Part shown: positions 2,399-61,398 of the stretch, one piece after another | How the letters are laid out: each line of letters starts with the position of its first letter | How positions within the stretch are numbered: position 1 is the stretch's first letter | IMG/VR virus record: IMGVR_UViG_3300047548_001236 | Span: 1-64,000 of that record | DNA: 64,000 nucleotides | Strand: one strand, 5' to 3' | Translations under genes and position numbers: made by a program | The notes under the pieces: model-generated | Told to the model about the DNA's origin: nothing | Database searches by the model: none | The model's input: the letters and a program-made list of their open reading frames with translations, nothing else

Positions 2399-2399
2399 C

Positions 2400-2687: not shown

Positions 2688-2737
2688 GTTTGAATGTTTA
2701 TGGGTGGAGCACTATGTACCCCACCCATAATCCCTAC

Positions 2738-3706
2738 TTAGGTGCGAGCTGCCAGAGTCTTGAAGTATTCAAGGTCGTCATCGTCTTCACCGCTCGAAGT
2801 GATCGACGGACCTTCGTCCTCCTTGATCTTAGGAGCAGGAGCCGACTTCATTTGAGGCTTGCTCAGTTTGCTCATATCAATTTCGTCATCGACGTCGTCT
2901 TCAAAGGTCGTGGCAGGAGCCGACTGAGAAGCACCAGCATCGGACGATACACCGAGTACTCGATGCAGACGAGCCTGCAGTTCATCGTAAGGCTTGAAGT
3001 TGTGAGGAGCGATAACATCCTTCAACGGATGGCATTGCTTCCAAATAGCTTCCATACGGTCGTCGTCCTCGAACAGAGCGCCAGGCGAGTCGAATTCAGA
3101 CTTATCGTAGTTAGGATATCCGTCAACAACACGGATCTTGAGGCGGAAGTTTGCACCTTCCCACAGATCGAACGGATTGACCTTTTCCTCGTCTTCGAAC
3201 GAAGGGTTCATCAGCTCGTTCAACTTATCGTACACCTTCTTACCGTACTTGAACAAGAACACTTTACCCTCATTTTCAGGATTACCGGTGTCTTTGATCA
3301 CGTAGATGTTGGAAATGTAGTGCAGACGACGCTTCTGCTTGCGGACTTGCTTGCGCTGGGGCGATTCGTCGTCAGTTGTAGAGTTCCACAGCTTTGCGTT
3401 CAGCTCAGCAACGGGATCGGGCTCGTCCATGCTGATAGTTTTGCGAGAGTTCTCGATATACCATTGGCCAGTGGGACCTTGGAAAGCATGATCCCACAGA
3501 CGAACGAAGGGGAAATCTTCTCCATCAGGTTCAGGAAGGAATCGGATAATCGCGAAGGCGTTGCCAGCTTGATCTCGAGTGGGCTTCCAGTACTTGTCCG
3601 CTTCTGGATTGGTGTAGCCCTTATTGCCTATCTTTTGAAGCTGCTCGGTCAGCTTTTCAAAGGCTTTGTTGCGGTTCTTCTTAAGCGATGCGAAAGATGA
3701 TGTCAT
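2738..3706 (-). CDS. 32: Single-stranded DNA-binding protein gp32
   Basis: AIIRFLP, WYIENS, FKYGKK, NPFDLWEGANF motifs; acidic tail. Confidence 0.95.
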   Translation of the reverse strand: MTSSFASLKKNRNKAFEKLTEQLQKIGNKGYTNPEADKYWKPTRDQAGNAFAIIRFLPEPDGEDFPFVRLWDHAFQGPTGQWYIENSRKTISMDEPDPVAELNAKLWNSTTDDESPQRKQVRKQKRRLHYISNIYVIKDTGNPENEGKVFLFKYGKKVYDKLNELMNPSFEDEEKVNPFDLWEGANFRLKIRVVDGYPNYDKSEFDSPGALFEDDDRMEAIWKQCHPLKDVIAPHNFKPYDELQARLHRVLGVSSDAGASQSAPATTFEDDVDDEIDMSKLSKPQMKSAPAPKIKEDEGPSITSSGEDDDDLEYFKTLAART

Positions 3707-3768
3707 TATGTGTCTCCTTATGTATAGACGGTGTATGTTTCGATGTATGTTCGTTGTATTACCGACTT

Positions 3769-4395
3769 CTAATGTTCGGCTTCGTATTTATGCTGTCCCA
3801 CATAGGTTTTGAGCAATGTAGCAAACTTTTTTTTGTCCACCTTGATGAAGGGAAGATACTTCGTTGCTAGCTTGATTGCATCCTGTGCAACAACGTCATA
3901 CTCCAACTGTTGCTTCCAATATGGAAAAACATTGGTAATGTGAGTCAGGATCGTAAAGAACTCCAGTGATATCTGGTTTCTAAACAGCAACGTAATTACA
4001 TACGGATGTGATCCATTAGCCACGGTGAAGTTGTCTTCCAATGTGGGTTTGAGCTTGTTTAGCTCGCTCGTGAAATGGTGAGTCAAACCATCAATTTTTC
4101 TCTTCCATTCCACGTACACCTGTTCGGCTGACTCTTCGCAGAGATCGCGGACCCATATGTTCGGATCCTTGATCAGATTTGCGAGAATGAGGTCGTTCCA
4201 ATTCCTGTTCTTCGATAGCTTGAAAAAGAAGTATGCGTCGCTTCTTGTTTGGAACGAGTCGAACGATGCTTTCACCTTACCATGGTATTTGTGAAAATCA
4301 TACGATTCAGTGGTGAAGTGCCTTTTCAAAGCTAGATATTTCAGGTATACGTCAAACGACTCTTTAGTCGCAAAGTTGACGGGGAGCGTTGTCAT
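3769..4395 (-). CDS. 59: Helicase loader gp59
   Basis: YLKYLALKRHF...YDFHKYHGK N-terminus; 33-59-32 synteny. Confidence 0.9.
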   Translation of the reverse strand: MTTLPVNFATKESFDVYLKYLALKRHFTTESYDFHKYHGKVKASFDSFQTRSDAYFFFKLSKNRNWNDLILANLIKDPNIWVRDLCEESAEQVYVEWKRKIDGLTHHFTSELNKLKPTLEDNFTVANGSHPYVITLLFRNQISLEFFTILTHITNVFPYWKQQLEYDVVAQDAIKLATKYLPFIKVDKKKFATLLKTYVGQHKYEAEH

Positions 4396-4881: not shown

Positions 4882-5464
4882 AGCTCTCTATATAGATATA
4901 CCCTAACTCCTTGAAATGTTCAACAATTTCCTGCTCGTTCTGCCAAATTGGAATCAACTCGTCGTATTGAGGGTCGGGTGAATGTCTCAAATGAACCTCG
5001 ATCACTTTATCGCCTATAAACTCAACGTTGATACGGGTGATGTTGTGATCGGCTGGTTCTTCGAAAAACAAGCTGGTCAAAGGTGGAAGATCGTGAATCC
5101 TCGTCCATTTCTTGAACTTGTAGAGGTTGTCAGCATCAACAGACGCTTCCCAACCCGAAACAGGAACCCATTTACCTTCCCATTGATAGTCAACAGAAAT
5201 CTGACGTCCTTGAAACTCTTCACACCAAAAATATCCGGGTGGGACAACCGTTGCATCGTCAGCATGAATCCACTTGATACGAGCACCGGCTGACATCCCA
5301 ACAATGTTCATCACTGGTCGGATCACGTAGGCAGCTGATGTTTTTGGAGCTATTCCAGCAGGTCCACAATAGTAGCCGAGCTCCTCAGCTAGCCACAGTT
5401 TGTTGAACCAATGTCTCAAACCAGGATACTTTTGATACGCTTCGATGTCCGTTGTAGCCATCAC
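4811..5464 (-). CDS. Conserved phage protein, possibly ATP-grasp-like
   Basis: WFNKLWLAEELGYYCGPAG; INVEFIGDKVIEVHLR resembles an ATP-grasp C-terminal strand. Confidence 0.55.
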   Translation of the reverse strand: MMATTDIEAYQKYPGLRHWFNKLWLAEELGYYCGPAGIAPKTSAAYVIRPVMNIVGMSAGARIKWIHADDATVVPPGYFWCEEFQGRQISVDYQWEGKWVPVSGWEASVDADNLYKFKKWTRIHDLPPLTSLFFEEPADHNITRINVEFIGDKVIEVHLRHSPDPQYDELIPIWQNEQEIVEHFKELGYIYIESFDDADGFIERPRLGFMAKNNTGE

Positions 5465-6126
5465 TCAACCTCTGGGAATAAACATTTGCTTACGAAGTAA
5501 TCGACGTCTTGCTCGTCAAGACCCAACGCTTTCATTGTTCTAGGCGTGTGGGGATTCTGCTTCTGAAAATAAGCGTAGCGGTTGTGCGCATACGAAGAAG
5601 GCATGTCGTCCTCCACGTTCATAATGTTTACATACCAACGGGTGTTGGCCGTCACTAGCGAGACCACATCCTCAATTTCCTTTTCTGTTTGAATGTTGCC
5701 AGCGGCAATCATACTACCAGAAAAAATCGCACGAGCCCAATCAGGCAACTCGCGGTTTTTCGACCAGTTGTATTTTGACGCAACATCGGAAAAGTATTTT
5801 AACGCAGGGTCATTCAAATTGACAGGAGAGAAGTCGTGAAACGCTCCTGTTACTTTTGTCGGGCCAGATATCACATCAAACCCGTATATAGGAGCTCCTG
5901 ACTGCAGGTTTGGGAATATACACACGTGCATCATCCACAGCTTCTTACTTTCGCGAGCGTCGACAACGTCAATGTGAGCGCGTCGAAACTTGTCCGACTT
6001 CCATGTCAGATTGACCCACCCAGGACGATTGAACCTATCCATCTGATCCTCTTGATACCTTTCAAGGGATCGATCAAAAATAGTTTCAATCTCCCTTTGG
6101 AGCTTTATTAGAGGATCCCACATCAT
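5461..6126 (-). CDS. pcyX: Ferredoxin-dependent bilin reductase (PcyX/PcyA-like)
   Basis: FRRAHI, MMHVCIFP, PIYGFD, GAFHDFSP, LPDWARAIFS, QKQNPHT motifs; adjacent to heme oxygenase. Confidence 0.8.
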   Translation of the reverse strand: MMWDPLIKLQREIETIFDRSLERYQEDQMDRFNRPGWVNLTWKSDKFRRAHIDVVDARESKKLWMMHVCIFPNLQSGAPIYGFDVISGPTKVTGAFHDFSPVNLNDPALKYFSDVASKYNWSKNRELPDWARAIFSGSMIAAGNIQTEKEIEDVVSLVTANTRWYVNIMNVEDDMPSSYAHNRYAYFQKQNPHTPRTMKALGLDEQDVDYFVSKCLFPEVE

Positions 6127-6670
6127 TGAATTCTTGCTCCAATTCTTCAAAAAACTCGTATATCATGTCGAAACAGCGGTTAGCCTCATCTGCCATCCCG
6201 TCGTGCAGTTTATCGCGGATTTTCTGTTTGAGAACGTCCACGTCTTCGTCAAACTGGTAGTGGAGTCCTGAACCAGGCACTAACTTACGAAGGATTTGAC
6301 CTCCAGAAAGATCGCCCATATGTCTGACGTAGATATGAGCCATCAATCTGTCAGGTTCTGACGAAATTGACCCTACATAGTCAATGTATCTATCAATGGA
6401 CTTGAGATGTTTAGGGATAGAGAACCCATGTTCTCTTTCAAGCTCAGTTAGATCTTTGGATATCTGATTCGATCTCTTGATGACCTCAATCCCATTCAAC
6501 AAACCTTTGTTTGTGGCTGCTGATTCAAGAACGTAATAGCACAACAGTTGGTTAGATAGATAGACGTAGTACTGGTAAGGAGTTATCTCCTTTTTGATCA
6601 TACGTCTGACAAAATTTGATCGCTCGGCTCTCTTGTGATTTTCAAGCGTCAGTTCTTTCAAATTATTCAT
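6086..6670 (-). CDS. hemO: Heme oxygenase
   Basis: LKELTLENHKRAE proximal His; AHIYVRHMGDLSGGQIL. Confidence 0.9.
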   Translation of the reverse strand: MNNLKELTLENHKRAERSNFVRRMIKKEITPYQYYVYLSNQLLCYYVLESAATNKGLLNGIEVIKRSNQISKDLTELEREHGFSIPKHLKSIDRYIDYVGSISSEPDRLMAHIYVRHMGDLSGGQILRKLVPGSGLHYQFDEDVDVLKQKIRDKLHDGMADEANRCFDMIYEFFEELEQEFNDVGSSNKAPKGD

Positions 6671-6879
6671 GGTTTGCATATGTTTGTGCTCGGTAATACC
6701 AAAGACGTGAGCTCTTTCGTGAACACAACAGCGTTGTTGGTTATCACTTTGCAAAGCTCGGTTTGTTTATCGACAAATTCGTGAAGGCCTTTACGGATCA
6801 CATCGTTGGTGACTGTTGCATCCACGAATTGTTTTTTCGACTGCTGAATATAGTCGATTGTCCAGTTAACGTTTAACAT
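6667..6879 (-). CDS. Hypothetical helical protein
   Basis: ORF starting MLNVNWTID with GGAG SD. Confidence 0.55.
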   Translation of the reverse strand: MLNVNWTIDYIQQSKKQFVDATVTNDVIRKGLHEFVDKQTELCKVITNNAVVFTKELTSLVLPSTNICKP

Positions 6880-8244: not shown

Positions 8245-9036
8245 ATGTCTATTTATACACCTTATACCTATCTTATAGGATGGTCTTCAATAAGTAAATA
8301 TTATTATGGCGTCCGTTTTGCGAAAAACTGCCACCCAAGTGATTTGTGGGTGAAGTACTTCACCTCTTCCAAAACCGTAGCTGAATACCGTAAACTTTAC
8401 GGTGAGCCTGACGTGATTGAGGTTCGAAAAACATTCACAGATAAACACTCGGCAATTTTGTGGGAGGAGAGAGTGCTCCGAAAACTAGATATCAAGCACA
8501 ACGAAAAGATGCTTAATGCGAACGTTGCAGGCGCAATCGTGAAGAATCTTGATCACGCAAAAGGAAGACCGAGTAAACTCAGAGGCAGATATTGGACGGA
8601 GGAACAGAAAGCGAAGCTCAGAAAACCAAAATCAGTCCCTAGTCCGTTAAAGGGAAAACAATTGACAGATGAACATAAAGAGAAGCTCCGTGCTGCTAAA
8701 CGCGACTATAAACCGTGGAACGCTGGCAAAACTGGCCTACAGAGTCATTCGAGCGAAACAAAAGAAAAAATGCGGATGGCTAAGATCAAGTCAAAAGTCA
8801 TTATATTTTCAGAATGCCCTTGCTGTAAGGAAATAAAAGTTAAGCCAAATCAAACTTTCTGTAGCAATTCGTGTAGAGCGAAACACAACGCACAAAAATT
8901 ATCAGCTCAGGGAAAATTTGGATTTCAGAACAAGTCTAACCAAGATGCTGCGCAGTTAGCTAGAAGGCCCGTTGGGTTATACGGTGGAGCCCATACCGCA
9001 GACTCAATCAAGCAGCTAGGCGAACCTGTGGCTTGA
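8245..9036 (+). CDS. Homing endonuclease, GIY-YIG-like with NUMOD3 repeats
   Basis: YTYLIGW...YYYGVR, HSSETKEKMR repeats; late promoter TATAAATA at 8174-8181; antisense to its neighbours. Confidence 0.8.
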   Translation: MSIYTPYTYLIGWSSISKYYYGVRFAKNCHPSDLWVKYFTSSKTVAEYRKLYGEPDVIEVRKTFTDKHSAILWEERVLRKLDIKHNEKMLNANVAGAIVKNLDHAKGRPSKLRGRYWTEEQKAKLRKPKSVPSPLKGKQLTDEHKEKLRAAKRDYKPWNAGKTGLQSHSSETKEKMRMAKIKSKVIIFSECPCCKEIKVKPNQTFCSNSCRAKHNAQKLSAQGKFGFQNKSNQDAAQLARRPVGLYGGAHTADSIKQLGEPVA

Positions 9037-9336
9037 AATTATCGTTTGCAATGTTTGTTGCAGTTATTATTGTCTTCGCGGTAACGGCGCTTAGATCCCG
9101 GTAGCTCCATCCTGCCTAGTCCGCCTGTCGATCCTATTTCGAGCCCATCAAAGATACACTTGCTGATATCCTGTTAGATTTCAACTTGACCCACTACAGA
9201 TCAAAGTATCTAACACCGCTTCCGTTATCAGTCCGGTAGGTAGTTAACCTGTTTCCTTTGGCAAGTGTATCTATGGTGGACCCGCTGGGTACCGCCCCCA
9301 GGTCCAGAACGTGTTCAGTGAATATCATCACTACAA
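8962..9336 (-). ncRNA. ssrA: Circularly permuted (two-piece) tmRNA
   Basis: Acceptor piece ends GGGGGCGGTACCCAGCGGGTCCACCA (9274); intervening segment 9147-9273; coding piece starts GGGCTCGAAATAGGATCGAC (9146); tag ANDNFKPQVRLAA* (9008-9049); G3.U70 pair. Confidence 0.93.
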
Positions 9337-9339
9337 TTG

Positions 9340-9370
9340 TATTTATACTAGATCATGCTGAACAAGTCAA
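9340..9370 (-). promoter_or_regulatory. Overlapping sigma70-type (TTGACT-17-TATAAA) and T4 late (TATAAATA) promoter for tmRNA
   Basis: TTGACTTGTTCAGCATGATCTAGTATAAATA. Confidence 0.75.
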
Positions 9371-9500
9371 CCGCGATCGTATCTTCTTTGCTTTTCTTCG
9401 TAGGTGTCGTATCTTTCGGTCTCGCTTCCCATCAACTCCTCCTATGAAAAGAGGGGCTAACCATTGGCCCCTCACGAGTCTATTACGCGACCAGACGTAT

Positions 9501-18569: not shown

Positions 18570-18674
18570 TGGTATCCCAGACAGGATTCGAACCTGCACC
18601 TACGTCGACTGATAACCAGCGGTAGGCCCTAGCTTTTTATGGCCCCGGTGTTTACCCACTTCCACCACTAGGAT
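18570..18674 (-). tRNA. Degenerate Leu-like tRNA with enlarged variable arm
   Basis: Acceptor, D and T arms and CCA intact; anticodon stem poorly paired. Confidence 0.5.
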
Positions 18675-18680
18675 ATTTTT

Positions 18681-18757
18681 TGGAGGTCGACCATGGACTT
18701 GAACCACGACCCCAGCTCTTGCAAGAGCTGTACATTAACCAATTTTGCTAATCGACC
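18681..18757 (-). tRNA. tRNA-Cys-like with 8-nt anticodon loop
   Basis: CAGCT-CTTGCAAG-AGCTG; U73; CCA. Confidence 0.7.
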
Positions 18758-21237: not shown

Positions 21238-21313
21238 TGGCGGCCCTGGTGGGACTCGAACCCACGACCATGAGTTTTAGAGGCTCTAGCTCTACCATCT
21301 GAGCTACAAGGCC
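21238..21313 (-). tRNA. Amber suppressor tRNA (anticodon CUA)
   Basis: Loop CT-CTA-AA, canonical D/T arms, G73, CCA; two mismatches in anticodon stem. Confidence 0.8.
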
Positions 21314-21842: not shown

Positions 21843-22020
21843 CAGGATCATTTTACGTGCTCTACTAACTGAGCTACTCTCCCATCAAAGATACACCGTT
21901 TTTACAGATTTCCCTCTTTCGAGTAACGCACCTCTGTCGATGTATCTGTGGTGGGAGAGGGTGGATTTGCACCACCGACCACGGCTTTATCGGAGCAAAA
22001 AGATTGCTGAATTGATCCTT
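21843..22020 (-). tRNA. Circularly permuted tRNA-Ile(GAU) in CAGCAA cassette 3
   Basis: 3' half 21949-21996 transcribed before 5' half 21856-21883; rejoins to 76 nt with CGGCT/AGCCG stem and loop CCGATAA. Confidence 0.85.
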
Positions 22021-22031
22021 TTGAAATTATT

Positions 22032-22157
22032 TCAGGTTCGCCTTTTACGTTGACCTAACTACTTAGTCGATCACCCCGTAGTGAAGTTGGCGGGGTGAGC
22101 AGGACTTGCACCTGCATCTACGGCTTGACATGCATAATTGTATGCTGAACCGAACCT
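22032..22157 (-). tRNA. Circularly permuted tRNA-Asp(GUC) in cassette 4
   Basis: 3' half 22088-22133, 5' half 22048-22077; stem ACGGC/GCCGT, loop ATGTCAA, G73. Confidence 0.85.
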
Positions 22158-22164
22158 TTTAATC

Positions 22165-22238
22165 TGGTGCTCCAGCGCGGTAACGATCCGCGGTCTCACC
22201 CGTACCAAGGGCGTGTAATACCTTTATACTACAGGAGC
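22165..22238 (-). tRNA. tRNA-Thr(GGU)
   Basis: Loop TTGGTAC; variant T loop. Confidence 0.85.
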
Positions 22239-23399: not shown

Positions 23400-24355
23400 T
23401 CTACTTGCAACGGGGAGTACGAGGGGATTTGCACCAGGCCCCTGAACCTTCTCCTCTTTTCAGCTCCTCAGGGAAGGAGCCTACTTCTGCACCTTGCTTA
23501 CTCCGCTCTGGAAGTAGAATATTGTTGCGGGTGAGATTACCCCGTATTGTGAGCGCCTTTCCGATGTACCACATCCCTTGCGAGGAGTGTTGTCGGGTTA
23601 TCCACAAGAGTCTTTCGATCATCTTGTATCGCTCAGTGCTGCCGTTTTTGAGGTCTGGCTGTTGACCTGTCGCATGTTACTACTCGTCCGTCTTTCCTAC
23701 GCCTGCCTTGCGAGCAGCTCAGAGGCGCTAACCTCCTACGTGATCATTCTGAACAACTACTCTAGCCTTGCGAGCCTTCGTAGGCCTGATTATCTTTCGA
23801 CTCAGGCATTAAGCACCTTTCGTAACACACCGGAGCAGACTTTCGCTTTTTGAATCTATGTTGCTTTGAACCAAAATCAAACGCTAATTTAATAGCTGCG
23901 AACCTACTGAGAAGTGCTGCTCCAGTTGCTCCACACCTTGTTAGATGCAGAATACCACACTCCTCCTGTCTTTCTCCTTGCGGGATACTCAACGTCACTT
24001 CACGAATCCGGTGTGACCCTTCCTCGTTGATGATCCTACACCGCCCTTCTACGCGAATAGTCGGACTATGTAGACACCTGTTGGACTTTTCCATTCGTTA
24101 GTTTGGCTGAAAACTGTTTGGGCGCCAACCCTCTTACACCTCACCGATCGGCTCTGGTGCTATCCTTTCGGACAGTCTTCCTAACTTACTGGATACCTCC
24201 TAGCTTCTAAGGCTAGAAGGGACTTGCTTTCGGTTTAATCCGAGTCAAGTCTATCCCAGGCTTGTATGAATGGACCATTTTACTGGCGCAGGTATGTAGG
24301 AATCCCTGCTTTGGGTGTGTTACCACACTTACCCTGACGACGTCATACCGCCATT
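23400..24355 (-). ncRNA. Candidate large structured ncRNA (about 950 nt)
   Basis: No credible ORF, many hairpins, downstream of a promoter and boxA within the tRNA island. Confidence 0.45.
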
Positions 24356-27947: not shown

Positions 27948-28078
27948 GTGTATTCTCCGTATGTTTTGTATATGTGCGTATATTTTTGTATGAACAATGT
28001 GTAGGCACGATGTAGTAATGCGTTCACAACACTATTTATACACGGTTACGCATACGATACAGCACCTACGAAGAAAAA

Positions 28079-28177
28079 TATCCTGGTTGGACTCGAACCA
28101 ACGGCCTGCGCTTTATTCCCAGCGTTTGGGTCCTTCACCATGAGGGAGCACTGCTCTACCGACTGAGCTACAGGATG
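28079..28177 (-). ncRNA. tRNA-like RNA with 34-nt anticodon loop, no CCA
   Basis: Canonical D and T arms; two hairpins in the anticodon loop. Confidence 0.6.
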
Positions 28178-28190
28178 TTTCGGAATTCGT

Positions 28191-35623: not shown

Positions 35624-35632
35624 ATATATTTT

Positions 35633-35770
35633 TCTGGATCAACTTTTTGCTGTATACTGTGCTGCTATTACACTAATCCGCCATAGTTAGATTTGGTGGC
35701 GGACCTAGGATTTGCACCTAGACTAGTCGTTTATGATACGAAAAGCTAATTTGTTGCTGGAATGATCCAT
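35633..35770 (-). tRNA. Circularly permuted tRNA-Met(CAU) in cassette 10
   Basis: 3' half 35694-35740, 5' half 35656-35682; stem GT|CGT/ACGAC, loop ATCATAA. Confidence 0.85.
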
Positions 35771-35777
35771 TATTGAT

Positions 35778-35856
35778 TGGAGCGGGCAGGGAGAGTTGAA
35801 CTCCGCGTTCTACGGCTTGGAAGGCCGCTGGTCGCCCCTTGACCTTGTCTACCCGC
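35778..35856 (-). tRNA. tRNA-Gly(UCC), atypical
   Basis: Loop CTTCCAA; U73; odd D arm. Confidence 0.75.
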
Positions 35857-38215: not shown

Positions 38216-38291
38216 TGGTAGCCGAGGAGGGATTCGAACCCCCGACATTTTCGGTGTAAACGAAACGCTACTACCACTGAGCTACTCGGCT
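38216..38291 (-). tRNA. tRNA-Val(UAC)
   Basis: Loop TTTACAC. Confidence 0.9.
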
Positions 38292-38298
38292 ATATTCT

Positions 38299-38429
38299 CT
38301 GGATCAACTTTTTGCTACGCGTTCTATCTACTAAACTAACCCCTGTCAGTAATATGGTCAGGGGTGTAGGATTTGCACCTACGTCTCGATCTCCCAAAGA
38401 TATGCTAATTAGTTGCTGTAATGATCCAT
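38299..38429 (-). tRNA. Circularly permuted tRNA-Pro(UGG) in cassette 11
   Basis: 3' half 38355-38401, 5' half 38318-38345; stem CG|ATC/GATCG, loop TTTGGGA, C1-G72, A73. Confidence 0.87.
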
Positions 38430-38436
38430 CAGAATG

Positions 38437-38703
38437 TTATTTCTTCTTAGACTTCATCTTCTCTTCGTACCTAAACTTACCACTTCTGATGAACCAAGTC
38501 AAGTCTTTTGGCGTCACTTGTAAAGACATAGGGACATCAAAGTCACAATCTCCTGCATGGAAACCACACGAACAGTAGCTACCAGCTCGAATAGAACCGA
38601 CTTCATCGTTCTTCCAAGCTCCAACGTGCCGAATCTTAGTGTGTGTCTTTCCGATGGAATACTCATAGGTCTTTCCATCAACTTCAATCTTACGGTACGA
38701 CAT
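38437..38703 (-). CDS. Hypothetical protein
   Basis: AAGGAG SD, MSYRKIEVDG. Confidence 0.65.
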   Translation of the reverse strand: MSYRKIEVDGKTYEYSIGKTHTKIRHVGAWKNDEVGSIRAGSYCSCGFHAGDCDFDVPMSLQVTPKDLTWFIRSGKFRYEEKMKSKKK

Positions 38704-39068: not shown

Positions 39069-39422
39069 TGGTGGACTGTATCGGATTTGAACCGACATTG
39101 TAAGGTTATCTGACACCAGATGGTCGTTACCGACATGGATTTACACAGGCCCCACGGTTACCGTTGTTTACTAGTCAACAGCCCATTGGTGCCTAAGTCG
39201 TACATGCTAAAGTCAGCAAGACGAACATAGGACTTTATCTTGGTGGATCTGACGGGACTCGAACCCGCGTAACTCTGCCTTGTGTACCCCTAACGAATTA
39301 AGGTGGCAGTGTGATTCCTCACGTACACTAACAGACCCATAATTTGGTGGAACAGGGAAGTCGTGTAGTCGCTCCCAGGCGGCCCATATTGGCCCCGCAG
39401 TTATACACTCTGCGCATGCCCC
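39069..39422 (-). ncRNA. Three tRNA-like RNAs with G3.U70 Ala-type acceptors and aberrant bodies
   Basis: 39069-39184, 39241-39338, 39345-39422; each GGG.../...TCC-A-CCA. Confidence 0.65.
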
Positions 39423-41003: not shown

Positions 41004-41621
41004 CTAAGGTGTGTAATTACGACACTCTGATAATGACTGTATGAATACAATATTTTTGTAGGTATTCATCAGAATATGAACTTTCTCTGTCTGCGCTTTG
41101 AAAGCAGCGGGATTTTTAGGGTCGAGATACACGTCATATTTTGGCAGATAAAAATCAGGAAAATAATTGTGAGTCACTCCTGCTGTATCTATCCAAGGTA
41201 TAGGGTCTGGCCTAACCCATTCGATATTCAGTTCATCGAGCCTTTGAGCAAGTGCTAGTTCCCACGATGAGTCTAACATAACACCCTTATATTCGACAAC
41301 CCCTTTTCGCAGTCTTCTGTGCTTTGATGCGAGAGCTTTTACTCTGGTTTTTTGTTTCGATTCATCTGTATGTTTTCTACCGAGAAATGTTCTATGATCG
41401 ACGTGATCATACACACCGTTTTTATGGTGTTCAGACACTTTTTCAGCAGCTCTTTTTCTACCCTCTATGGTTTTAGCATTTCTTGCTTTTTCCATATTAT
41501 TAACGTAGGCGTTTCTTTTAGGATTTGAGTCACACCATCTACTGTGATTAGCCATCCAACCTTTTGGTTTATCGTCTAGATCATATGTTGTGTTGCAGTG
41601 TTTGCAAGACCCTTGCTTCAT
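41004..41621 (-). CDS. Putative PD-(D/E)XK homing endonuclease with NUMOD3
   Basis: GRKHTDESKQK; DSSWE...YFPDFYLP...YLDPK; late promoter upstream. Confidence 0.75.
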   Translation of the reverse strand: MKQGSCKHCNTTYDLDDKPKGWMANHSRWCDSNPKRNAYVNNMEKARNAKTIEGRKRAAEKVSEHHKNGVYDHVDHRTFLGRKHTDESKQKTRVKALASKHRRLRKGVVEYKGVMLDSSWELALAQRLDELNIEWVRPDPIPWIDTAGVTHNYFPDFYLPKYDVYLDPKNPAAFKAQTEKVHILMNTYKNIVFIQSLSECRNYTP

Positions 41622-41674
41622 TATAGCCTCCTTTTGAGACTATTTATAAAACGAAGGCTCTCGTTCTATCCAAA

Positions 41675-41800
41675 TGGCGACCCCGGTAGGACTCGAACCT
41701 ACAACCTACTGATTAGATCGTGCCTTAGAAGATTCGCACTTCACTGGGCTTCCATACCCTCAGGCCAAGTCAGTTGCTCTATCCATTGAGCTACGGAGTC
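41675..41800 (-). tRNA. tRNA-Arg(UCU) interrupted by a 50-nt insert in the anticodon
   Basis: Removing 41717-41766 restores a 76-nt cloverleaf with loop CTTCTAA. Confidence 0.85.
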
Positions 41801-41804
41801 GCTA

Positions 41805-41868
41805 TGTGTTTGGCTCTACCTCTAGGAACAAAGGCGACTTAGCTGCTTTAACCGCCAAGCAGTACCGA
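41805..41868 (-). repeat. Three-way-junction leader motif, copy 4
   Basis: GGTA-CTGCTT..AAGCAG-CTAAGTC-GCCT..AGGT-AGAGCCAAACACA. Confidence 0.7.
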
Positions 41869-41874
41869 TATATA

Positions 41875-41951
41875 TGGTAGGGGATACCGGACTTGAACCG
41901 ATAACCTGCGGATTATGAGTCCGACGCTCTAACCAATTGAGCTAATCCCCC
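41875..41951 (-). tRNA. tRNA(CAU), Ile2 or Met
   Basis: Loop CTCATAA. Confidence 0.9.
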
Positions 41952-43885: not shown

Positions 43886-44249
43886 CTTTGTACTCCTTCT
43901 TCAACAGCCATCTAGTATTTTTATCAACCATGAACCACTCCTTGTGTTTCGCCTGCTTCCAAGGAACAGTCGATGCGATCCACGAAGGCCCATCAAAGTA
44001 CATCGTCGGAAAACGATCTACGATCTCATTTACTACTTCTTTGATCATTGACCATTCAATGCACCTCACATACCACCGAAGCTGGATGTATCGCTGGCAA
44101 GCAACGTGCATGTGTTCGTAATAGAACTGCCGAGCTTGCTCGTTATCACTAGTGATATATTCATCACCAATATCGATTGGTTCGGACTTGAAGTTATAAC
44201 GCTCAACCCGCATCTGTGTGGGGCCTGCAATGATCTTATACTTCATCAC
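43809..44249 (-). CDS. Hypothetical protein
   Basis: ORF in operon. Confidence 0.55.
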   Translation of the reverse strand: MMKYKIIAGPTQMRVERYNFKSEPIDIGDEYITSDNEQARQFYYEHMHVACQRYIQLRWYVRCIEWSMIKEVVNEIVDRFPTMYFDGPSWIASTVPWKQAKHKEWFMVDKNTRWLLKKEYKDGIRMRQKETSGVPALQSGESPSDG

Positions 44250-44617
44250 AATTCCTTCGCAAACTTCTCAACGAGATGAACGCTCTTAGAAAACGCTTCC
44301 ACTTCCCACCACCGTTGCATATACGGAATGTCGTGGCAGTTATCCATCCAGTGGCCGAGGTTTTCTTTCATATACTGCTTGACATGAATCATCTCGTGAG
44401 CAATCGTCGTGAAGATCTCACCGATGTTACGTTTACCGGTTTTGACAAGAATCACAAATTCGGATTCTGTGACATCCATGCAGAGACCATAGACACCATC
44501 GAGATCGTCTTCTCCGTGAATTGAAATGCTATCAGGCTGAATCTGCAGTTCCTTGCAGAGCCACAAAACAAACTTCTGAACGAGCGTTGCGTTGGTGATT
44601 TCAGTTTTGAGAAGCAT
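44246..44617 (-). CDS. HExxH metallopeptidase-like protein
   Basis: TIAHEMIHVKQY...WWEVEA. Confidence 0.7.
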   Translation of the reverse strand: MLLKTEITNATLVQKFVLWLCKELQIQPDSISIHGEDDLDGVYGLCMDVTESEFVILVKTGKRNIGEIFTTIAHEMIHVKQYMKENLGHWMDNCHDIPYMQRWWEVEAFSKSVHLVEKFAKEL

Positions 44618-47733: not shown

Positions 47734-48630
47734 CTAGCGCCCTTCATATTTCTCTAATACTGCTTTCAGCTCTGCAATCATTCGGTCGACTGGAACCTCG
47801 CGTTTGACAGCATTGTCCAGAGAACCGTAATGATGCTCTAGGCAATTCATGAGAAGCTCTTTGACTGCTTCCTCGTCAGGGGCGTGCTGCAAGGTCGACT
47901 TGACGTACAGCTCTTCAAGATGCCTTTCAGCTTCGTTGAACCAATTGCGTAGCTTCTCCTCAGTCCATTCCCCACGACGGATCGATTTCAGGATCTCACG
48001 ATTCGCTTCGATATCAAGATCATGCTCGACAAGGATCTGCTGAGCTTCAAGAGCAAGTCGAACAACGTGATACGCAAACTTCACATCATAGCCAAACTCG
48101 TCGATTGAAGCCTGACGCTTTGGGTTCGAGGCATTAGCTTTCGTGCCGATCTTGTGAAGCTGAGCGTACGCGTATCCACGGAACTTGTGGTAGCTACCCT
48201 TATGGAGGAACAACTTGCGATTGTCTCGAACCATTTGCCCAATCTTCGATGCATACAGAACGCACCGTTGTGGGACAAACAAACTGTCGCACATGTTCGG
48301 GTTGTTTTCCATACACAGGTGGAAGTACTTCACGATCGAATAGATACTGAAATCGTATTCCTGACGAGCCTCAGCATCCATGATGTGGTGTTCCTGATAT
48401 TGTTCGAATCGCTGGATCTGTCGACCGAACCCAAGGATTTCTCCTCTTAGATGAGGGAAGACATCTTCCTTAGGCGGAATACAGAAACCATACACGTCCA
48501 TATCAGACGTATCGCTAGACACGCCATAGGCAACAGAACCCATGATCACCTCATAGTGAACATTCTGAGGCAGCCACTTAGGAGGAGCGATGAGCCCCTT
48601 TTGCTTCATTAGTTGAACACGAGATGCCAT
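47734..48630 (-). CDS. Pol-beta superfamily nucleotidyltransferase
   Basis: GSVAYG...SDMDVYG; NPN; YDVKFAYH..RL. Confidence 0.88.
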   Translation of the reverse strand: MASRVQLMKQKGLIAPPKWLPQNVHYEVIMGSVAYGVSSDTSDMDVYGFCIPPKEDVFPHLRGEILGFGRQIQRFEQYQEHHIMDAEARQEYDFSIYSIVKYFHLCMENNPNMCDSLFVPQRCVLYASKIGQMVRDNRKLFLHKGSYHKFRGYAYAQLHKIGTKANASNPKRQASIDEFGYDVKFAYHVVRLALEAQQILVEHDLDIEANREILKSIRRGEWTEEKLRNWFNEAERHLEELYVKSTLQHAPDEEAVKELLMNCLEHHYGSLDNAVKREVPVDRMIAELKAVLEKYEGR

Positions 48631-57784: not shown

Positions 57785-58078
57785 TCACTCTTCCCAACGA
57801 TGGGTTTCATAATCCCAGTGTCGATGGTCATACACCTTGATATTGAACATAACCCCAAGCGTTTCTACTCGGAAGTCGGGACCCTGATGATCCGACCCCC
57901 ACCAATGCAGATCGATGAGAAAGTCAAATACAGTTTGGAACGACTTGAAGTTTGTGATCTGGATTTCTGCACTCTTATTTTTGGTTAGTGTCCAGTGCTT
58001 ATAGAAGTAGTCCACTTGTGATTTTTCTTTGATAGGCGGACTATAAAACAGGTTATCTATTTTCAGAGAAAGTCTCAT
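57785..58078 (-). CDS. Hypothetical protein
   Basis: DH.GP...YDHRHWD. Confidence 0.55.
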   Translation of the reverse strand: MRLSLKIDNLFYSPPIKEKSQVDYFYKHWTLTKNKSAEIQITNFKSFQTVFDFLIDLHWWGSDHQGPDFRVETLGVMFNIKVYDHRHWDYETHRWEE

Positions 58079-58614
58079 CACTCTCTCCCGTGATGATCGA
58101 TCGGCTTCCACGTCTTCTTTTTCATGATTCGACGAACATCGTCCATATTCAGCGGCATGTAGTTGTGACAGTCGACGCCGACGTCGAAGCTCAGAGCGTT
58201 AGGATCGTCAGGTAGAGATCCATGGCTATGGCCATATAGCATCCAGGCACCATGGTGAGACTTATTCCACACGCGCATTGAGTAGTGGCACAGAACGATG
58301 AACTGGCCATCGATAGTCATTTCGTGGTAGTCCTTAATCCACTGCCACCCTTTCAGGCGACGTCCTACCTTGTCGTGATTGCCAAGCACAAGGTGCTTAC
58401 GACCATTGAGACGATCGAGAATCGACTGGCCCTTTTCTTGATCCATGAAACAGAAGTCGCCGACGTGAAACACATCATCGTCGACACCAATCCTGCTGTT
58501 CCAGTTCTCGATCATTTTTGAATCCATTTCTTCCTTGGATTTGAAAGGTCGATTACTGTATTTGATAATGTTGGCGTGCCCAAAATGGGTATCGGACGTA
58601 AACCATGTAGTCAT
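58078..58614 (-). CDS. Calcineurin-like phosphoesterase
   Basis: FTSDTHFGH, VGDF, GNHD, HY, YGHSH, DVGVD. Confidence 0.9.
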   Translation of the reverse strand: MTTWFTSDTHFGHANIIKYSNRPFKSKEEMDSKMIENWNSRIGVDDDVFHVGDFCFMDQEKGQSILDRLNGRKHLVLGNHDKVGRRLKGWQWIKDYHEMTIDGQFIVLCHYSMRVWNKSHHGAWMLYGHSHGSLPDDPNALSFDVGVDCHNYMPLNMDDVRRIMKKKTWKPIDHHGRE

Positions 58615-58806
58615 TTTGCTATTCTCCACAATCCATTCTCCACGGGCACATCGAAAGCATCAGAGTGGAGCAATCATCTTCACCAAAACACGGAGGTGGA
58701 GGTTGCTGTCTGAGCTTCCTGATCTGCTCGAAGAGTTCTTGTTGTTTTTGTTTGTTTCCTAGACGTTCCTGAACAACAGATTCGTCTAGCAATTGTTGAA
58801 TCCTGC

Positions 58807-59284: not shown

Positions 59285-59686
59285 TCATTCGATGCCGTCC
59301 AACTCTTTTTGCAGCTTTTCGAGTTGCTTCCGCTTGCGTTCCAGCTCTGTAGCCTTACGCTTTTCTTCGCGTGCAATTCGAGCCTTCTCTTCCTTTTCTT
59401 GCTGCTTACGCAGTTTCTCCTGCCGCGCTTCGTAAAGCTCTTTAGCCTTTTCCAAATGCTGCTCGACAGTCGATGGAGTAATCTCCTCAACCAATCGTAG
59501 AAGGTAATTTGCTTTTAGTTCGTACCGATATTGGTTAGCAAAACTGATCAACTTTTCTAGCTCAGCCACTCGTTTATCGTCCACCTCGTGCCAATCAATA
59601 CCGTCTGTGATAGTCCGAACAGTTTCGGTGCTTTCGTAGTCGTATTGCTCGTCACTATAGACTTTGACAATCTTAATTCGTCTCAT
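59285..59686 (-). CDS. Hypothetical coiled-coil protein
   Basis: ORF in operon. Confidence 0.6.
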   Translation of the reverse strand: MRRIKIVKVYSDEQYDYESTETVRTITDGIDWHEVDDKRVAELEKLISFANQYRYELKANYLLRLVEEITPSTVEQHLEKAKELYEARQEKLRKQQEKEEKARIAREEKRKATELERKRKQLEKLQKELDGIE

Positions 59687-60792
59687 ACTGTATCCTCATT
59701 GTGCTTGATACCATTCACGTCATGGTTGTTGCTTCCATAGAACCAGTGCTTTTGCGTCGCTACGTGGTTCGCTCGAACGAATTTTGCAACTGATGTCTTG
59801 AAGTCTTTGTATTCAAAACTATCAGCCAGCCTTACTACGTAACCTTCGTGGATGTCACGGTCGGTCTTTTCATTGTAGAGCTTCTTGATTGCCGCTTCGT
59901 CCCAGATCCCGTCAAACAAGACTGGCACCATCGGCATATCAAGCAAAGAGAACCATTCAATGGTATCGTCCCAGCTTAGACATTGATTATACTCGTTCCA
60001 AATCGAAAAGCCAAGTAGATATCCAGGCAGATCTTCATATTTGATCGAATGGACTGCATAAAGGTTCTCAGCGCAAACACGCCATCCTTCTGGCAGCTCA
60101 TATGAGCGCCGCATCCAGAAATTCTTTGCCCAATCTCGAGTGTAGTGACTACGACCATCAACGGACCGTGCGTGGCAGTAGTCCCGATACCCCGAGAAGT
60201 TTTCACCATCCATCTTGCGAGTAACAATCACTCGCTTCCCCTCGAACACCGAGAGATCGCTCATCGTCCGATCGTCTTCGGTTTTGCCTGGAGACCACGG
60301 AAGGTGATAGGTGCGAGGATATTTGACGTATTCGACAAAACGAATCGGCTCCAGATCACCAACGAGCTCTTCACCCATCGACAGATATTCAAACCGATTG
60401 TAGTCGGCCAGAACCTTACGAACGGATTCGTCGTTGTAAAGAGGTCCTTTTGTACGTCGACCATCTGTTAGGATCACATTACCCCACTTATCGTAGACGT
60501 GATCAGGATACATGTCTTCCGGCAGCGCAATCTTCTCGATCTTTGCCGCCCGACGAACATCCTCGACGCTCAGCCAAGTCGTTTCGGCTTTATAGTGACA
60601 CCCATCTTTACCGTCGTCGCAGAGCGTTGCTCCATTGTCTAGGTAATATCCGCCATCTGTCCAGAGACGACGTTCGATGACGTGATGAGCATCAATCTTG
60701 TGCCCGTTGTGAAGCCCATTTCCACAGACAACACAACGGTGCCGGTCTCGTTCGAATACCAAATTTCTGAAATCGTCTCTTGATAGTAGCAT
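59683..60792 (-). CDS. HNH-domain / ATP-dependent RNA ligase fusion
   Basis: CVVC...DAHH...NGATLC..CH N-terminus; KYPRTYHLPWSPG, KMDGEN, EGYVVR, KFVR. Confidence 0.85.
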   Translation of the reverse strand: MLLSRDDFRNLVFERDRHRCVVCGNGLHNGHKIDAHHVIERRLWTDGGYYLDNGATLCDDGKDGCHYKAETTWLSVEDVRRAAKIEKIALPEDMYPDHVYDKWGNVILTDGRRTKGPLYNDESVRKVLADYNRFEYLSMGEELVGDLEPIRFVEYVKYPRTYHLPWSPGKTEDDRTMSDLSVFEGKRVIVTRKMDGENFSGYRDYCHARSVDGRSHYTRDWAKNFWMRRSYELPEGWRVCAENLYAVHSIKYEDLPGYLLGFSIWNEYNQCLSWDDTIEWFSLLDMPMVPVLFDGIWDEAAIKKLYNEKTDRDIHEGYVVRLADSFEYKDFKTSVAKFVRANHVATQKHWFYGSNNHDVNGIKHNEDTV

Positions 60793-61398
60793 AACATTAC
60801 TCTTAATTCTTGCGAATGGAAGGGACGAGTCGGCCAGTATACTGCTTACCGAATACATCAACGGTTGCAATTTGATTGTTGGCGTAACCCACAAGGAGAC
60901 CCTGGACGTAGGTGTTATTGTAGACGATGGTTCTGATCATGCGATGACCTCGTACACACGGTGATATTCACCGTCTTGATTCGCCCATTGTTTTGTTTTA
61001 CGAAGCACCCGCTGAGCATCTACCTTGACGCCAATGAACGTCACCATATTGTCGATCTCGTCGATTGCATCCTTGAGCTTATCGTTACGAGTCGATAGTT
61101 GGGATCCACCTTGGCAGGTCACCTCCACGACAAACTCATCATTGAAGTGTTTTGGCATCAGAACTTTATCCATATTACTGACCTTTCTGGCTGAGTTTGC
61201 GGATGACGATGTCACGGTTGGTGATGGCAGCGGCAATCTTCTTGATTGCATCTTCCTTGGATTCGTTATCCAGGATCATCTTGACGAATGCTTCATTCAT
61301 TTTGGTGGTCGTTTCCATGATCTTGCTCCTCATTTGATAAACAACATATAGAAGGTTCGACGGACGCAGTCAACAAAAAAAGGGCCGAAGCCCTCTTT

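What the first reader, a model, noticed from the sequence alone, without database searches (positions are those of the whole stretch)
41675..41800. tRNA-Arg(UCU) with a 50-nt insert that itself resembles a miniature tRNA elbow
Seen: insert 41717-41766 sits within the anticodon, and precise removal restores a canonical tRNA. It can fold as GCCT/AGGC closing two hairpins, GGG-TATGGAAG-CCC (D-loop-like) and GAAG-TGCGAAT-CTTC (T-loop-like). Known: it is too short for a group I intron, and bacteria lack EndA. Inference: a new intron type removed by phage or host nucleases plus the phage RNA ligase, or a masked/decoy tRNA.
Basis: partly seen in the sequence, partly recalled or inferred. Interest (0 to 1): 0.82.

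Follow-up and report, generated by a model that had tools for sequence, protein, structure and literature searches.

The report
Mini-tRNA-shaped intron in phage tRNA-Arg
A phage tRNA-Arg gene is split inside its anticodon by a 50-base insert that belongs to a previously undescribed family of small, tRNA-elbow-like introns found only in uncultured phage tRNA genes, which suggests a new way of splicing tRNA in bacterial systems.

Summary
A tRNA-Arg(UCU) gene lies on the minus strand at 41800-41675 and carries a 50-nt insert at 41766-41717 between anticodon positions 34 and 35.

The insert is not a one-off. Pattern and covariance-model searches found 18 distinct relatives of 45-71 nt. They interrupt Arg, Lys, Met, Leu, Thr and Asn tRNA genes of uncultured phage and metagenome contigs. 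None turned up in the scan of one genome from each of 185,579 bacterial and archaeal species, or in 50,697 GenBank phage records.

All members fold as a closing helix P1, a variable hairpin, and a hairpin with an invariant G-C-closed loop UGCRANN that resembles a T-loop. Covariation is strong: 95-100% of cells pair and 11 of 15 pairs show compensatory changes.

One rule restores a 7-nt anticodon loop with the right anticodon in every member: cut 1 nt before P1 and 5 nt after it. The 3' cut lies 15-16 nt from the T-like loop, as the 3' end does in a tRNA.

It is not a group I intron, not a bulge-helix-bulge intron, and matches no Rfam family. Splicing by structure-measuring nucleases plus the phage RNA ligase is inferred, not shown.

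The parts
41675..41800 (-). Interrupted tRNA-Arg(UCU) gene (126 nt including the encoded CCA)
   Evidence: Rfam tRNA model at 58.5 bits, positions 1-71. ARAGORN with introns allowed. It sits where intronless tRNA-Arg(UCU) genes sit, about 100 nt upstream of the 205-aa gene, in 57 of 80 related loci. With the anticodon loop masked, its nearest intronless tRNAs are all Arg.
41767..41800 (-). 5' exon (positions 1-34, ends CUU)
   Evidence: It is homologous to 5'-half tRNA-Arg remnants in related loci that stop at C32-U33(-U34).
41717..41766 (-). 50-nt intron
   Evidence: Covariance model R1 scores 84.3 bits over 41708-41774. No Rfam match to the intron alone at E<=10.
41675..41716 (-). 3' exon (starts CUAA, ends CCA)
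41762..41765 (-). P1 5' strand GCCU, preceded by the unpaired or purine-paired G at 41766
   Evidence: Pairs with 41722-41725. Three of the four P1 pairs covary in relatives: GCCU/AGGC, GUCU/AGAC, GUCC/GGAC, UCCC/GGGA, GGCA/UGCC.
41746..41759 (-). H1 hairpin GGG(U)-loop-(G)CCC; variable loop
   Evidence: The stem covaries (UCC/GGA in L091, CCAG/CUGG in L099) and the loop is not conserved.
41728..41742 (-). H2 hairpin GAAG-UGCGAAU-CUUC; T-loop-like 7-nt loop at 41732-41738
   Evidence: The closing G-C pair is invariant in 13 distinct sequences and the stem covaries (GUGG/CCAC, CCG/CGG). The loop is UGCRANN in all members.
41717..41725 (-). P1 3' strand AGGC (41722-41725) plus the 5-nt tail ACGAU (41717-41721)
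   Evidence: The tail is always 5 nt. Its first base faces the base before P1: G.A in most members, G.G in L160/L161, A.G in L088/L090, C-G in L139.
41004..41621 (-). 205-aa endonuclease-like gene directly downstream of the tRNA
   Evidence: PHROG 'endonuclease' 4e-11 and 'Holliday junction resolvase' 2e-8. Some homologues carry NUMOD3. It is syntenic with tRNA-Arg(UCU) in most related loci. A role in intron biology is inferred only.
59683..60894 (-). RNA ligase with an N-terminal HNH-like region; candidate exon-sealing enzyme
   Evidence: PF09414 at 2e-25 over aa 221-373. PHROG RNA ligase at 4e-128, plus HNH PHROGs over aa ~40-110. Weak match to the IscB HNH region. HNH-Rnl2 fusions in jumbo phages are mentioned in PMC7824862.
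58078..58629 (-). Metallophosphoesterase next to the ligase; possible RNA end-healing enzyme
   Evidence: PF12850. PHROG phosphoesterase at 2e-55. Function inferred.
47734..48630 (-). RlaP-family nucleotidyltransferase (associated with RNA repair)
   Evidence: PF10127 at 1e-21. The family is described in PMC7824862. L111 carries a 90%-identical copy.

Best explanation
The insert is a genuine intron of a new, small, ORF-less, structured class. It interrupts the anticodon (34/35 or 35/36) of tRNA genes in T4-like and other large uncultured phages.

The intron RNA folds into a three-way junction that imitates the acceptor/T-arm half of a tRNA. It has a closing helix P1 extended by one flanking pair, a variable hairpin H1, and a hairpin H2 with a T-loop-like loop.

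The two cuts are set by the intron's own shape, not by the host tRNA. One falls 1 nt 5' of P1. The other falls 5 nt 3' of P1, which is 15-16 nt from the T-like loop. The excised piece therefore has tRNA-like ends: a paired 5' base and a 4-nt 3' overhang.

I infer that protein or RNP nucleases that measure from the T-loop make the cuts. RNase P is the obvious candidate for the 5' cut; the 3' nuclease is unknown. I further infer that the phage ATP-dependent RNA ligase (59683-60894) reseals the anticodon loop to give a working tRNA-Arg(UCU).

Shown: the family, its fold, the cut-site rule, and selection on the exons. Inferred: that splicing occurs, the cut chemistry, and which enzymes act.
For: Existence and position of the intron.

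Family: 17 distinct anticodon-arm sequences plus the tRNA-Leu member, in seven anticodon classes.

Fold: 100% of cells paired and 11/15 pairs compensatory in 7 sequences, 0/500 shuffles as good, and slid controls at or below 56%. In 13 distinct sequences 95% of cells pair. Six other members give the same minimum-free-energy topology. G.U pairs occur, so the pairing is at the RNA level on the tRNA strand.

Cut-site rule: the unpaired intron bases flanking P1 always sum to 6. Only the 1+5 split gives Arg(UCU) for the window and Leu(UAA) for the class II tRNA in L099 at the same time.

Independent identity checks: synteny with intronless Arg(UCU) in 57 loci, and nearest intronless tRNAs with the loop masked are Arg, Asn or Leu as predicted. 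The L139 tRNA lacks G3.U70 and has G1-C72 and C2-G71, which fits the rule's Thr(UGU) rather than ARAGORN's Ala.

Selection on the exons: orthologue L111 differs at 6 exon positions, including two compensatory pairs, but at only 1 of 50 intron positions.

Need for the tRNA: AGA is 76 of 358 Arg codons in 23 window ORFs.

Ruler: the distance from T-like loop to 3' cut is 15-16 nt while intron length runs 45-71 nt.

Ligase. In L091 a PF09414 ligase lies about 950 nt downstream of a lone intron-bearing tRNA-Lys.
Against: No RNA data exist, so splicing itself is unobserved.

The energy of the intron fold is not better than shuffles.

No nuclease gene was found that co-occurs with the intron. The 123-aa neighbour also occurs in intronless loci, and neighbours in L086, L099, L100 and L105 have no Pfam match.

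The ligase could not be tested for co-occurrence, because only close relatives were retrievable and none lies on another intron contig.

No known tRNA 3'-processing endonuclease is a good fit for the 3' cut. Canonical RNase Z would cut 3 nt further upstream. The tail has no CCA.

PF09414 ligases are best known for sealing nicks in duplex RNA rather than open anticodon loops (my knowledge).
Confidence: 0.6

Rival explanations
1. It is a small self-cleaving or self-splicing ribozyme. The three-way junction with the T-like loop catalyses both cuts, and perhaps the rejoining, without a protein nuclease. A host RtcB or the phage ligase would seal the ends if needed.
For: A 20-nt core, AGUGAAGUGCRAAUCUUCUA, is identical in eight lineages across five tRNA species. 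That is more conservation than base pairing needs. Its size is in the range of hammerhead, twister and pistol ribozymes. A phosphoesterase that could heal cyclic-phosphate ends lies beside the ligase.
Against: No Rfam ribozyme or other family matches, even at E<=10. The bases at both cut sites vary: U|G, C|G, A|G, U|A and G|C at the 5' site; U|C, C|C, U|U, G|U, C|A and A|U at the 3' site. The junction strands differ between the Asn, Thr and Arg-type subfamilies. Only the T-like loop and the topology are universal.
Confidence: 0.12
2. The insert is never removed. The tRNA body serves as a carrier that stabilises and processes a small structured RNA displayed in place of the anticodon, such as a decoy for tRNA-targeting host defences or a protein-binding RNA. 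Alternatively the tRNA is kept masked.
For: Hairpins with the same unusual G-UGCAAAU-C loop occur outside introns in the window (4 copies) and in L139 (3 copies). This suggests a module with a function of its own. The host tRNAs (Lys, Asn, Arg, Leu, Thr, Met) include classic anticodon-nuclease targets (my knowledge).
Against: Without splicing there is no reason for the flanks to total exactly 13 nt in every member. There is also no reason for U33, A37 and an anticodon matching the tRNA body to be kept on both sides of inserts sitting at two different positions. At this locus the interrupted gene stands where intronless Arg(UCU) genes stand in relatives, and no other Arg(UCU) gene was found in the window.
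Confidence: 0.13
3. It is a DNA-level selfish insertion that has killed the gene (a pseudogene). Its apparent RNA structure would be a leftover of the element's origin.
For: The tRNA-Arg anticodon loop is a recombination hot spot in relatives. There, 5' halves of this tRNA type stop at U33/U34 and are followed by a promoter-like spacer, a different tRNA-Arg gene and the endonuclease gene. L104 has a P1 mismatch and an anticodon-stem mismatch and may be decaying.
Against: Exons of diverged copies keep the cloverleaf through compensatory changes. Intron helices covary and use G.U pairs, which only makes sense in RNA. The intron is kept in many independent contigs from different environments.
Confidence: 0.05

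Closest known systems
Archaeal/eukaryal tRNA introns cut at a bulge-helix-bulge motif by EndA/Sen and joined by RtcB or Trl1
   Same: Short, ORF-less, protein-dependent (as inferred here), located in or next to the anticodon. Archaeal examples also occur at non-canonical positions. The cut sites are defined by RNA shape.
   Different: No bulge-helix-bulge motif can be drawn. Both cuts lie in one asymmetric internal loop (4-5 nt on one strand, 8-9 nt on the other) on the same side of P1, not in two 3-nt bulges separated by 4 bp (sequence). The hosts are phages with bacterial features: tmRNA and T4-like replication genes. No EndA gene was seen in the window, though not every ORF was searched.
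Bacterial group I introns in tRNA anticodon loops (e.g. cyanobacterial tRNA-Leu(UAA), tRNA-fMet, tRNA-Arg)
   Same: Same location in the gene (anticodon loop), sporadic distribution among related genes, and occurrence in tRNA-Leu(UAA) and tRNA-Arg. A neighbouring free-standing endonuclease gene recalls 'collaborative homing' (PMC3984707).
   Different: 45-71 nt rather than more than 200 nt. No P3-P9 core, no conserved terminal G, and the base before the 5' cut is not always U. No Intron_gpI hit. The 2014 review states that all phage introns then known lay in protein-coding genes, despite the many phage tRNA genes.
tRNA-like processing signals cut by RNase P and RNase Z (mascRNA, mitochondrial 'tRNA punctuation', two-piece tmRNA)
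   Same: A tRNA-like acceptor/T-arm module embedded in a longer RNA marks where it is cut. Here the 5' cut falls exactly 5' of the base that pairs at the foot of the acceptor-like helix, and that base is usually G with U before it.
   Different: Here the module is an intron inside a tRNA, so the flanks must be rejoined. It has no anticodon arm. The stack is 11-12 layers if the junction bases pair. The 3' cut is 4 nt after the helix, not 1 nt, and there is no CCA.
Phage T4 anticodon-loop repair (PrrC cut, then Pnkp and Rnl1 reseal)
   Same: A phage-encoded ligase is expected to reseal a broken anticodon loop. The window has a ligase, a phosphoesterase and an RlaP nucleotidyltransferase.
   Different: That pathway is repair of damage with nothing removed. 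Here 50 nt must be excised by two precise cuts. The ligase here is of the PF09414 (Rnl2-like) family with an HNH-like N-terminus, not Rnl1.

Membership tests
Group I intron | Conserved catalytic core (P3-P9), usually more than 200 nt | tested here: not met
   Family members are 45-71 nt. No Intron_gpI or other Rfam hit in the window region or on the intron alone at E<=10.
Group I intron | U before the 5' splice site in a U.G pair, and a terminal G before the 3' splice site | tested here: not met
   The last exon base is U, C, A or G. The last intron base is U, C, G or A.
Bulge-helix-bulge (EndA-type) tRNA intron | Two 3-nt bulges on opposite strands separated by a 4-bp helix, each holding one splice site | tested here: not met
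   Between the anticodon stem and P1 there are 4-5 nt on the 5' strand and 8-9 nt on the 3' strand. Both inferred cuts lie in this one internal loop. Neither orientation of the motif fits.
Known small self-cleaving ribozymes (hammerhead, twister, pistol, hatchet, HDV, hairpin) | Match to the family's covariance model | tested here: not met
   No hit at E<=10 with permissive filters on 56 nt centred on the intron or on 41600-41880.
T-loop structural motif | Five-base U-N-N-R-A unit in a hairpin loop closed by a G-C pair, as in tRNA 53-61 | tested here: met
   The loop is UGCRANN in all members and the closing G-C is invariant in 13 distinct sequences. The three-dimensional fold itself (reverse-Hoogsteen U.A) is not testable here.
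tRNA-like RNase P substrate (acceptor/T-arm minihelix) | Coaxial acceptor plus T stem of about 12 bp ending at a T-loop, cleavage 5' of the base paired at the foot, single-stranded 3' tail | tested here: inconclusive
   The stack is 1 (flanking pair) + 4-5 (P1) + 2-3 (junction bases, pairing assumed) + 3-4 (H2), or about 11-12 layers. The 3' strand runs 15-16 nt from loop to cut, against 16 in a tRNA. The base after the cut is G in most members and the base before it is usually U. There is no CCA. Actual cleavage is not testable here.
Functional tRNA-Arg(UCU) after removal of the insert | Cloverleaf, U33, 7-nt loop, Arg-type body, conserved genomic position | tested here: met
   The D-loop reads AAUGGAUA with A at position 20, an Arg identity element in E. 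coli (my knowledge).

The most novel reading that the evidence does not exclude
This is a third kind of tRNA splicing, and the first protein-dependent one in a bacterial/phage system. The intron is a miniature tRNA whose ends are made by enzymes that measure from its T-loop (RNase P at the 5' end, an unknown nuclease at the position equivalent to tRNA nucleotide 75/76). A phage RNA ligase then rejoins the anticodon. The released mini-tRNA, and the free-standing copies of the same hairpin in these phages, may have a function of their own.
Probability: 0.3. Interest if true: 0.92.

Novelty: categorically new. Interest (0 to 1): 0.85.

Why it matters
Bacterial tRNA genes are known to be interrupted by self-splicing group I introns. 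A 2014 review states that all phage introns then known lay in protein-coding genes, despite the many phage tRNA genes (PMC3984707).

A 50-nt, ORF-less, covarying intron inside the anticodon of phage tRNAs does not fit any known intron class. If it is spliced, three consequences follow:

- There must be an unrecognised cut-and-join pathway in phage-infected bacteria.
- Phage RNA ligases, so far seen as repair enzymes, would gain a routine substrate.
- tRNA-shape mimicry would be shown to serve as a splicing signal.

It would also matter for annotation, because standard bacterial tRNA finders miss these genes. It could also provide a compact, portable RNA excision module.

Tried and rejected
1. 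Folding energy as evidence. The intron and the precursor are no more stable than shuffles, so I relied on covariation instead.

2. Hammerhead-like reading of CUGA...GAA. The junction strands are 2, 3 and 2 nt rather than 7, 3 and 1, and no Rfam hit supports it.

3. Bulge-helix-bulge drawings in both orientations. Neither fits (sequence).

4. 'Only tRNAs reading ANN codons are hosts.' The tRNA-Leu(UAA) member in L099 rejects this.

5. Other cut rules. Splits of 0+6 or 2+4 around P1 give the wrong anticodons for the window (Thr) or for L099-Leu (UCA).

6. A co-occurring splicing protein.
   - The 123-aa ORF at 44246-44617 is shared with L111 and L086 but also with the intronless loci L020 and L023.
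   - Neighbours of the introns in L086, L099, L100 and L105 have no Pfam match.
   - Relatives of the ligase found in viral contigs are not on other intron-bearing contigs.

7. Closest homologues of the 205-aa protein (63-65% identity; L122-L131). All have intronless tRNA-Arg(UCU), so no intron-minus twin with identical exons was found.

8. Cultured phages. No match to the Arg-type or Asn-type intron in 50,697 GenBank phage records.

9. Literature. Six full-text searches found no description of such introns. Subscription-only papers were not searchable.

Full report
**What is at the coordinates**

The window equals positions 1-64000 of IMG/VR contig IMGVR_UViG_3300047548_001236, which is 282,855 bp long.

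On the minus strand, the Rfam tRNA model matches 41800-41678 over its whole length at 58.5 bits. The match has 54 bases where 4 are expected in the anticodon loop.

ARAGORN in its default bacterial mode misses the gene. With introns allowed it calls tRNA-Arg(UCU) at c[41675,41800] with a 50-nt intron after position 34.

Read, the parts are:
- 5' exon: 41800-41767, ending CUU
- intron: 41766-41717
- 3' exon: 41716-41675, starting CUAA and ending in an encoded CCA

Because of a shared U, a 33/34 insertion gives the same product.

However, its energy equals that of shuffled sequences (z = -0.18; precursor z = -0.91).

**It is a family**

The gene just downstream (41004-41621, 205 aa) has relatives in 80 viral contigs. 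In three lineages of those loci, tRNA-Asn(GUU) genes carry 51- or 71-nt inserts with the same layout.

Degenerate DNA patterns built from these sequences were scanned over the public collections:
- IMG/VR gave further members.
- JGI metagenomes gave further members.
- One genome from each of 185,579 bacterial and archaeal species gave only two chance hits, both inside PTS genes.

A covariance model (R1) found one more member, a tRNA-Leu(UAA) in L099.

In total there are 17 distinct anticodon-arm sequences plus the Leu member:

| Host tRNA | Members | Intron length |
|---|---|---|
| Arg(UCU) | window, L111, L105, L100/L106/L121 | 50 nt |
| Lys(UUU) | L091, L099 | 48 nt |
| Met or Ile2 (CAU) | L086 | 50 nt |
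| Leu(UAA) | L099 | 49 nt |
| Thr(UGU) | L139/L149 | 45 nt |
| Asn(GUU) | several subtypes | 51, 67, 71 nt |

No GenBank phage record contains the Arg-type or Asn-type intron. The exact 20-mer core occurs in only three IMG/VR contigs. The element is therefore rare and so far confined to uncultured phages.

**Structure**

Reading along a member, the order is:
- anticodon stem
- 3-4 exon bases
- one base (G in most, A in L088/L090, C in L139)
- P1, 4-5 bp
- 2 or more junction bases
- H1, a hairpin with variable stem and loop; the 71-nt forms have an extra hairpin here
- 0-3 junction bases (AGU in the Arg type)
- H2, 3-4 bp closed by G-C around the loop UGCRANN
- UA, or 2-3 other bases
- P1', the 3' strand of P1
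- a 5-nt tail
- 3-4 exon bases
- anticodon stem

On the seven Arg/Lys/Met-type sequences, all 105 cells pair and 11 of 15 pairs show changes on both sides. None of 500 shuffles reaches any of the five measures. Sliding the 3' partners drops pairing to 56% or less.

On 13 distinct sequences aligned by the model, 95% of cells pair, with G.U pairs present. One Asn variant has P1 GGCU/GGCU with two G.U pairs. This places the structure in RNA on the tRNA strand.

Six other members fold on their own into the same three-way junction.

The loop of H2 differs from a tRNA T-loop (UUCRANN) only at the second base.

**A single cut rule**

The unpaired intron bases on the two sides of P1 always add up to 6. 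The total single-stranded bases between the anticodon stem and P1 always add up to 13, split as 4+9 or 5+8.

Cutting 1 nt before P1 and 5 nt after P1' gives, in every member, a 7-nt loop of the form C-U-NNN-A-A.

The resulting anticodon agrees with independent evidence:
- The window gene sits where intronless tRNA-Arg(UCU) genes sit in 57 of 80 related loci.
- With the loop masked, the nearest intronless tRNAs are Arg for the window, L111 and L105. For L100 Arg(UCU) ties for first with Val and Met. They are Asn for six of the seven Asn-type sequences tested, and Leu(UAA) for the class II tRNA in L099.
- The L139 tRNA lacks G3.U70 and has G1-C72 and C2-G71. That fits the rule's Thr(UGU), not ARAGORN's Ala (identity rules from my knowledge of E. 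coli tRNAs).

Other splits fail. A 0+6 split makes the window tRNA Thr(UGU). A 2+4 split makes the L099 class II tRNA read UCA.

The same intron type sits at 34/35 in the window but at 35/36 in the Arg(UCU) gene of L100. The cuts therefore follow the intron, not the tRNA body.

**The gene is under selection**

L111, an independent NCBI metagenome contig, carries the orthologue. It has the same downstream gene and a 90%-identical RlaP gene.

Its exons differ from the window's at six positions. Four of these form two compensatory pairs, in the anticodon stem and the T stem. The intron differs at one position of 50.

AGA makes up 76 of 358 Arg codons in 23 window ORFs. No other tRNA-Arg(UCU) gene is in the window. 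The remaining 218 kb of the contig could not be read.

**What it is not**

- It is too small for group I and has no conserved bases at the splice sites.
- It has no bulge-helix-bulge geometry.
- It matches no Rfam family, ribozymes included, even at E<=10.

**tRNA-like geometry**

The base before P1 faces the first tail base. The pair is G.A in most members, G.G in L160/L161, A.G in L088/L090, and a Watson-Crick C-G in L139.

Counting that as a pair, the excised intron has a paired 5' end and a 4-nt 3' overhang, like a mature tRNA.

The 3' strand from the end of the T-like loop to the 3' cut is 15 nt in eight members and 16 nt in five. Meanwhile intron length ranges from 45 to 71 nt. In a tRNA, positions 61-76 span 16 nt.

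This points to recognition by something that measures from the T-loop. RNase P does this for 5' ends, and it would cut exactly at the inferred 5' splice site, which is usually U|G. That step is inference.

Canonical RNase Z would cut 3 nt too early for the 3' site, so the second nuclease is unknown.

**Enzymes at hand**

The window encodes:
- a PF09414 RNA ligase at 59683-60894 with an HNH-like N-terminal region; such fusions are noted in PMC7824862
- a metallophosphoesterase beside it, at 58078-58629
- an RlaP nucleotidyltransferase at 47734-48630

In L091, from a 490-kb phage contig, the intron-bearing tRNA-Lys is the only tRNA in 10 kb. An HNH gene abuts it, and a PF09414 ligase lies about 950 nt downstream on the same strand. 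This is suggestive, but it is a single case.

**DNA-level context**

The phage is T4-like (UvsX, gp32, gp59) and carries cyanophage-type genes for heme oxygenase and bilin reductase. Its tRNA region is dotted with HNH, GIY-YIG, NUMOD3 and other nuclease genes.

The 205-aa neighbour looks like a DNA endonuclease.

In at least a dozen related loci, a 5' half of a window-type tRNA-Arg stops at C32-U33(-U34). It is followed by a TATAAATA-containing spacer, a different complete tRNA-Arg(UCU), and the endonuclease gene. The break point in those loci coincides with the intron's insertion site.

This resembles 'collaborative homing', in which a free-standing endonuclease and an ORF-less intron share a target site (PMC3984707). 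It suggests one benefit of the intron: it interrupts an endonuclease target in the DNA. This is a hypothesis only.

**Novelty and limits**

Six full-text literature searches found nothing on such introns. A 2014 review says all phage introns then known lay in protein-coding genes. A 2020 survey of interrupted bacterial tRNA genes dealt with group I introns only. Papers behind paywalls were not searchable.

The main gap is that no RNA evidence is available. The cut chemistry and the enzymes remain inferred.

Noticed in passing
window ~38290-38450, 35630-35790, 22020-22180, 21880-22045 (minus strand): Four homologous elements of about 150 nt. Each has a closing helix GGAUC../..GAUCC and a T-arm-like hairpin with the same unusual loop as the intron (G-UGCAAAU-C). 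That hairpin is followed directly by a 7-nt 'acceptor 3' strand', ACCA, a loop of about 9 nt, and the complementary 'acceptor 5' strand'. They look like circularly permuted tRNA-like genes. ARAGORN and Rfam do not call them. The T-arm and acceptor hairpins covary.
   Followed up: partly
L139 2529-2553, 2661-2683, 2977-2999: Three free-standing hairpins, GUGAGG/GUAUGG-UGCAAAU-CCUCAC/CCAUAC, lie just upstream of an intron-bearing tRNA-Thr. The last one ends 4 nt before the tRNA. Rfam sees no tRNA there.
   Followed up: partly
L016, L067, L020, L022, L003, L008, L025, L046, L122, L126, L129, L131 (about 150 nt upstream of the 205-aa gene): 5' halves of a window-type tRNA-Arg end at C32-U33(-U34). 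They are followed by a spacer containing TATAAATA (like a T4 late promoter), a different complete tRNA-Arg(UCU), and the endonuclease-like gene. L131 also has a 3' half right after the ORF (3729-3769) whose acceptor strand matches the 5' half. In L016 and L067 the complete tRNA-Arg seems to lack a D-arm and to have a long extra arm.
   Followed up: partly
window 28077-28178 (minus strand): A second interrupted tRNA (Rfam 47.2 bits) has 27 extra bases in the anticodon loop (CCCUCAUGGUGAAGGACCCAAACGCUGGGAAUAA). It has no T-like hairpin, no obvious U33, and is not of the family described here.
   Followed up: partly
window 18570-18674, 18681-18757, 21238-21313, 39241-39338 (minus strand): Other odd tRNAs: one with a very long extra arm and a doubtful anticodon loop; one with an 8-nt anticodon loop (ARAGORN reads the anticodon as 'tgca'); a CUA-anticodon (amber suppressor-type) tRNA; and an ARAGORN-only call with an 18-nt insert.
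   Followed up: no
window 23528-23965 and 8962-9374 (minus strand): A GOLLD RNA (194.9 bits) lies inside the tRNA array. A permuted two-piece tmRNA is also present (90.4 and 74 bits).
   Followed up: no
L019 595-756; L054 7104-7227 (= L055 5398-5521): tRNA-like genes in related phages carry other inserts (27-90 nt) with repeated YUGAUCA motifs. The same GAUC helix motif closes the permuted elements in the window.
   Followed up: no
window 59683-60894; L091 5483-6172 and 7245-7973: In the window, the RNA ligase is fused to an HNH-like N-terminal region. In L091 the ligase has no HNH domain, but a separate HNH gene abuts the intron-bearing tRNA.
   Followed up: partly
window 5461-6754, 1331-4395: Cyanophage-type auxiliary genes (heme oxygenase, ferredoxin-dependent bilin reductase) lie next to T4-type UvsX, gp32 and gp59. 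This suggests a large T4-like cyanophage, which fits the permuted tmRNA.
   Followed up: no
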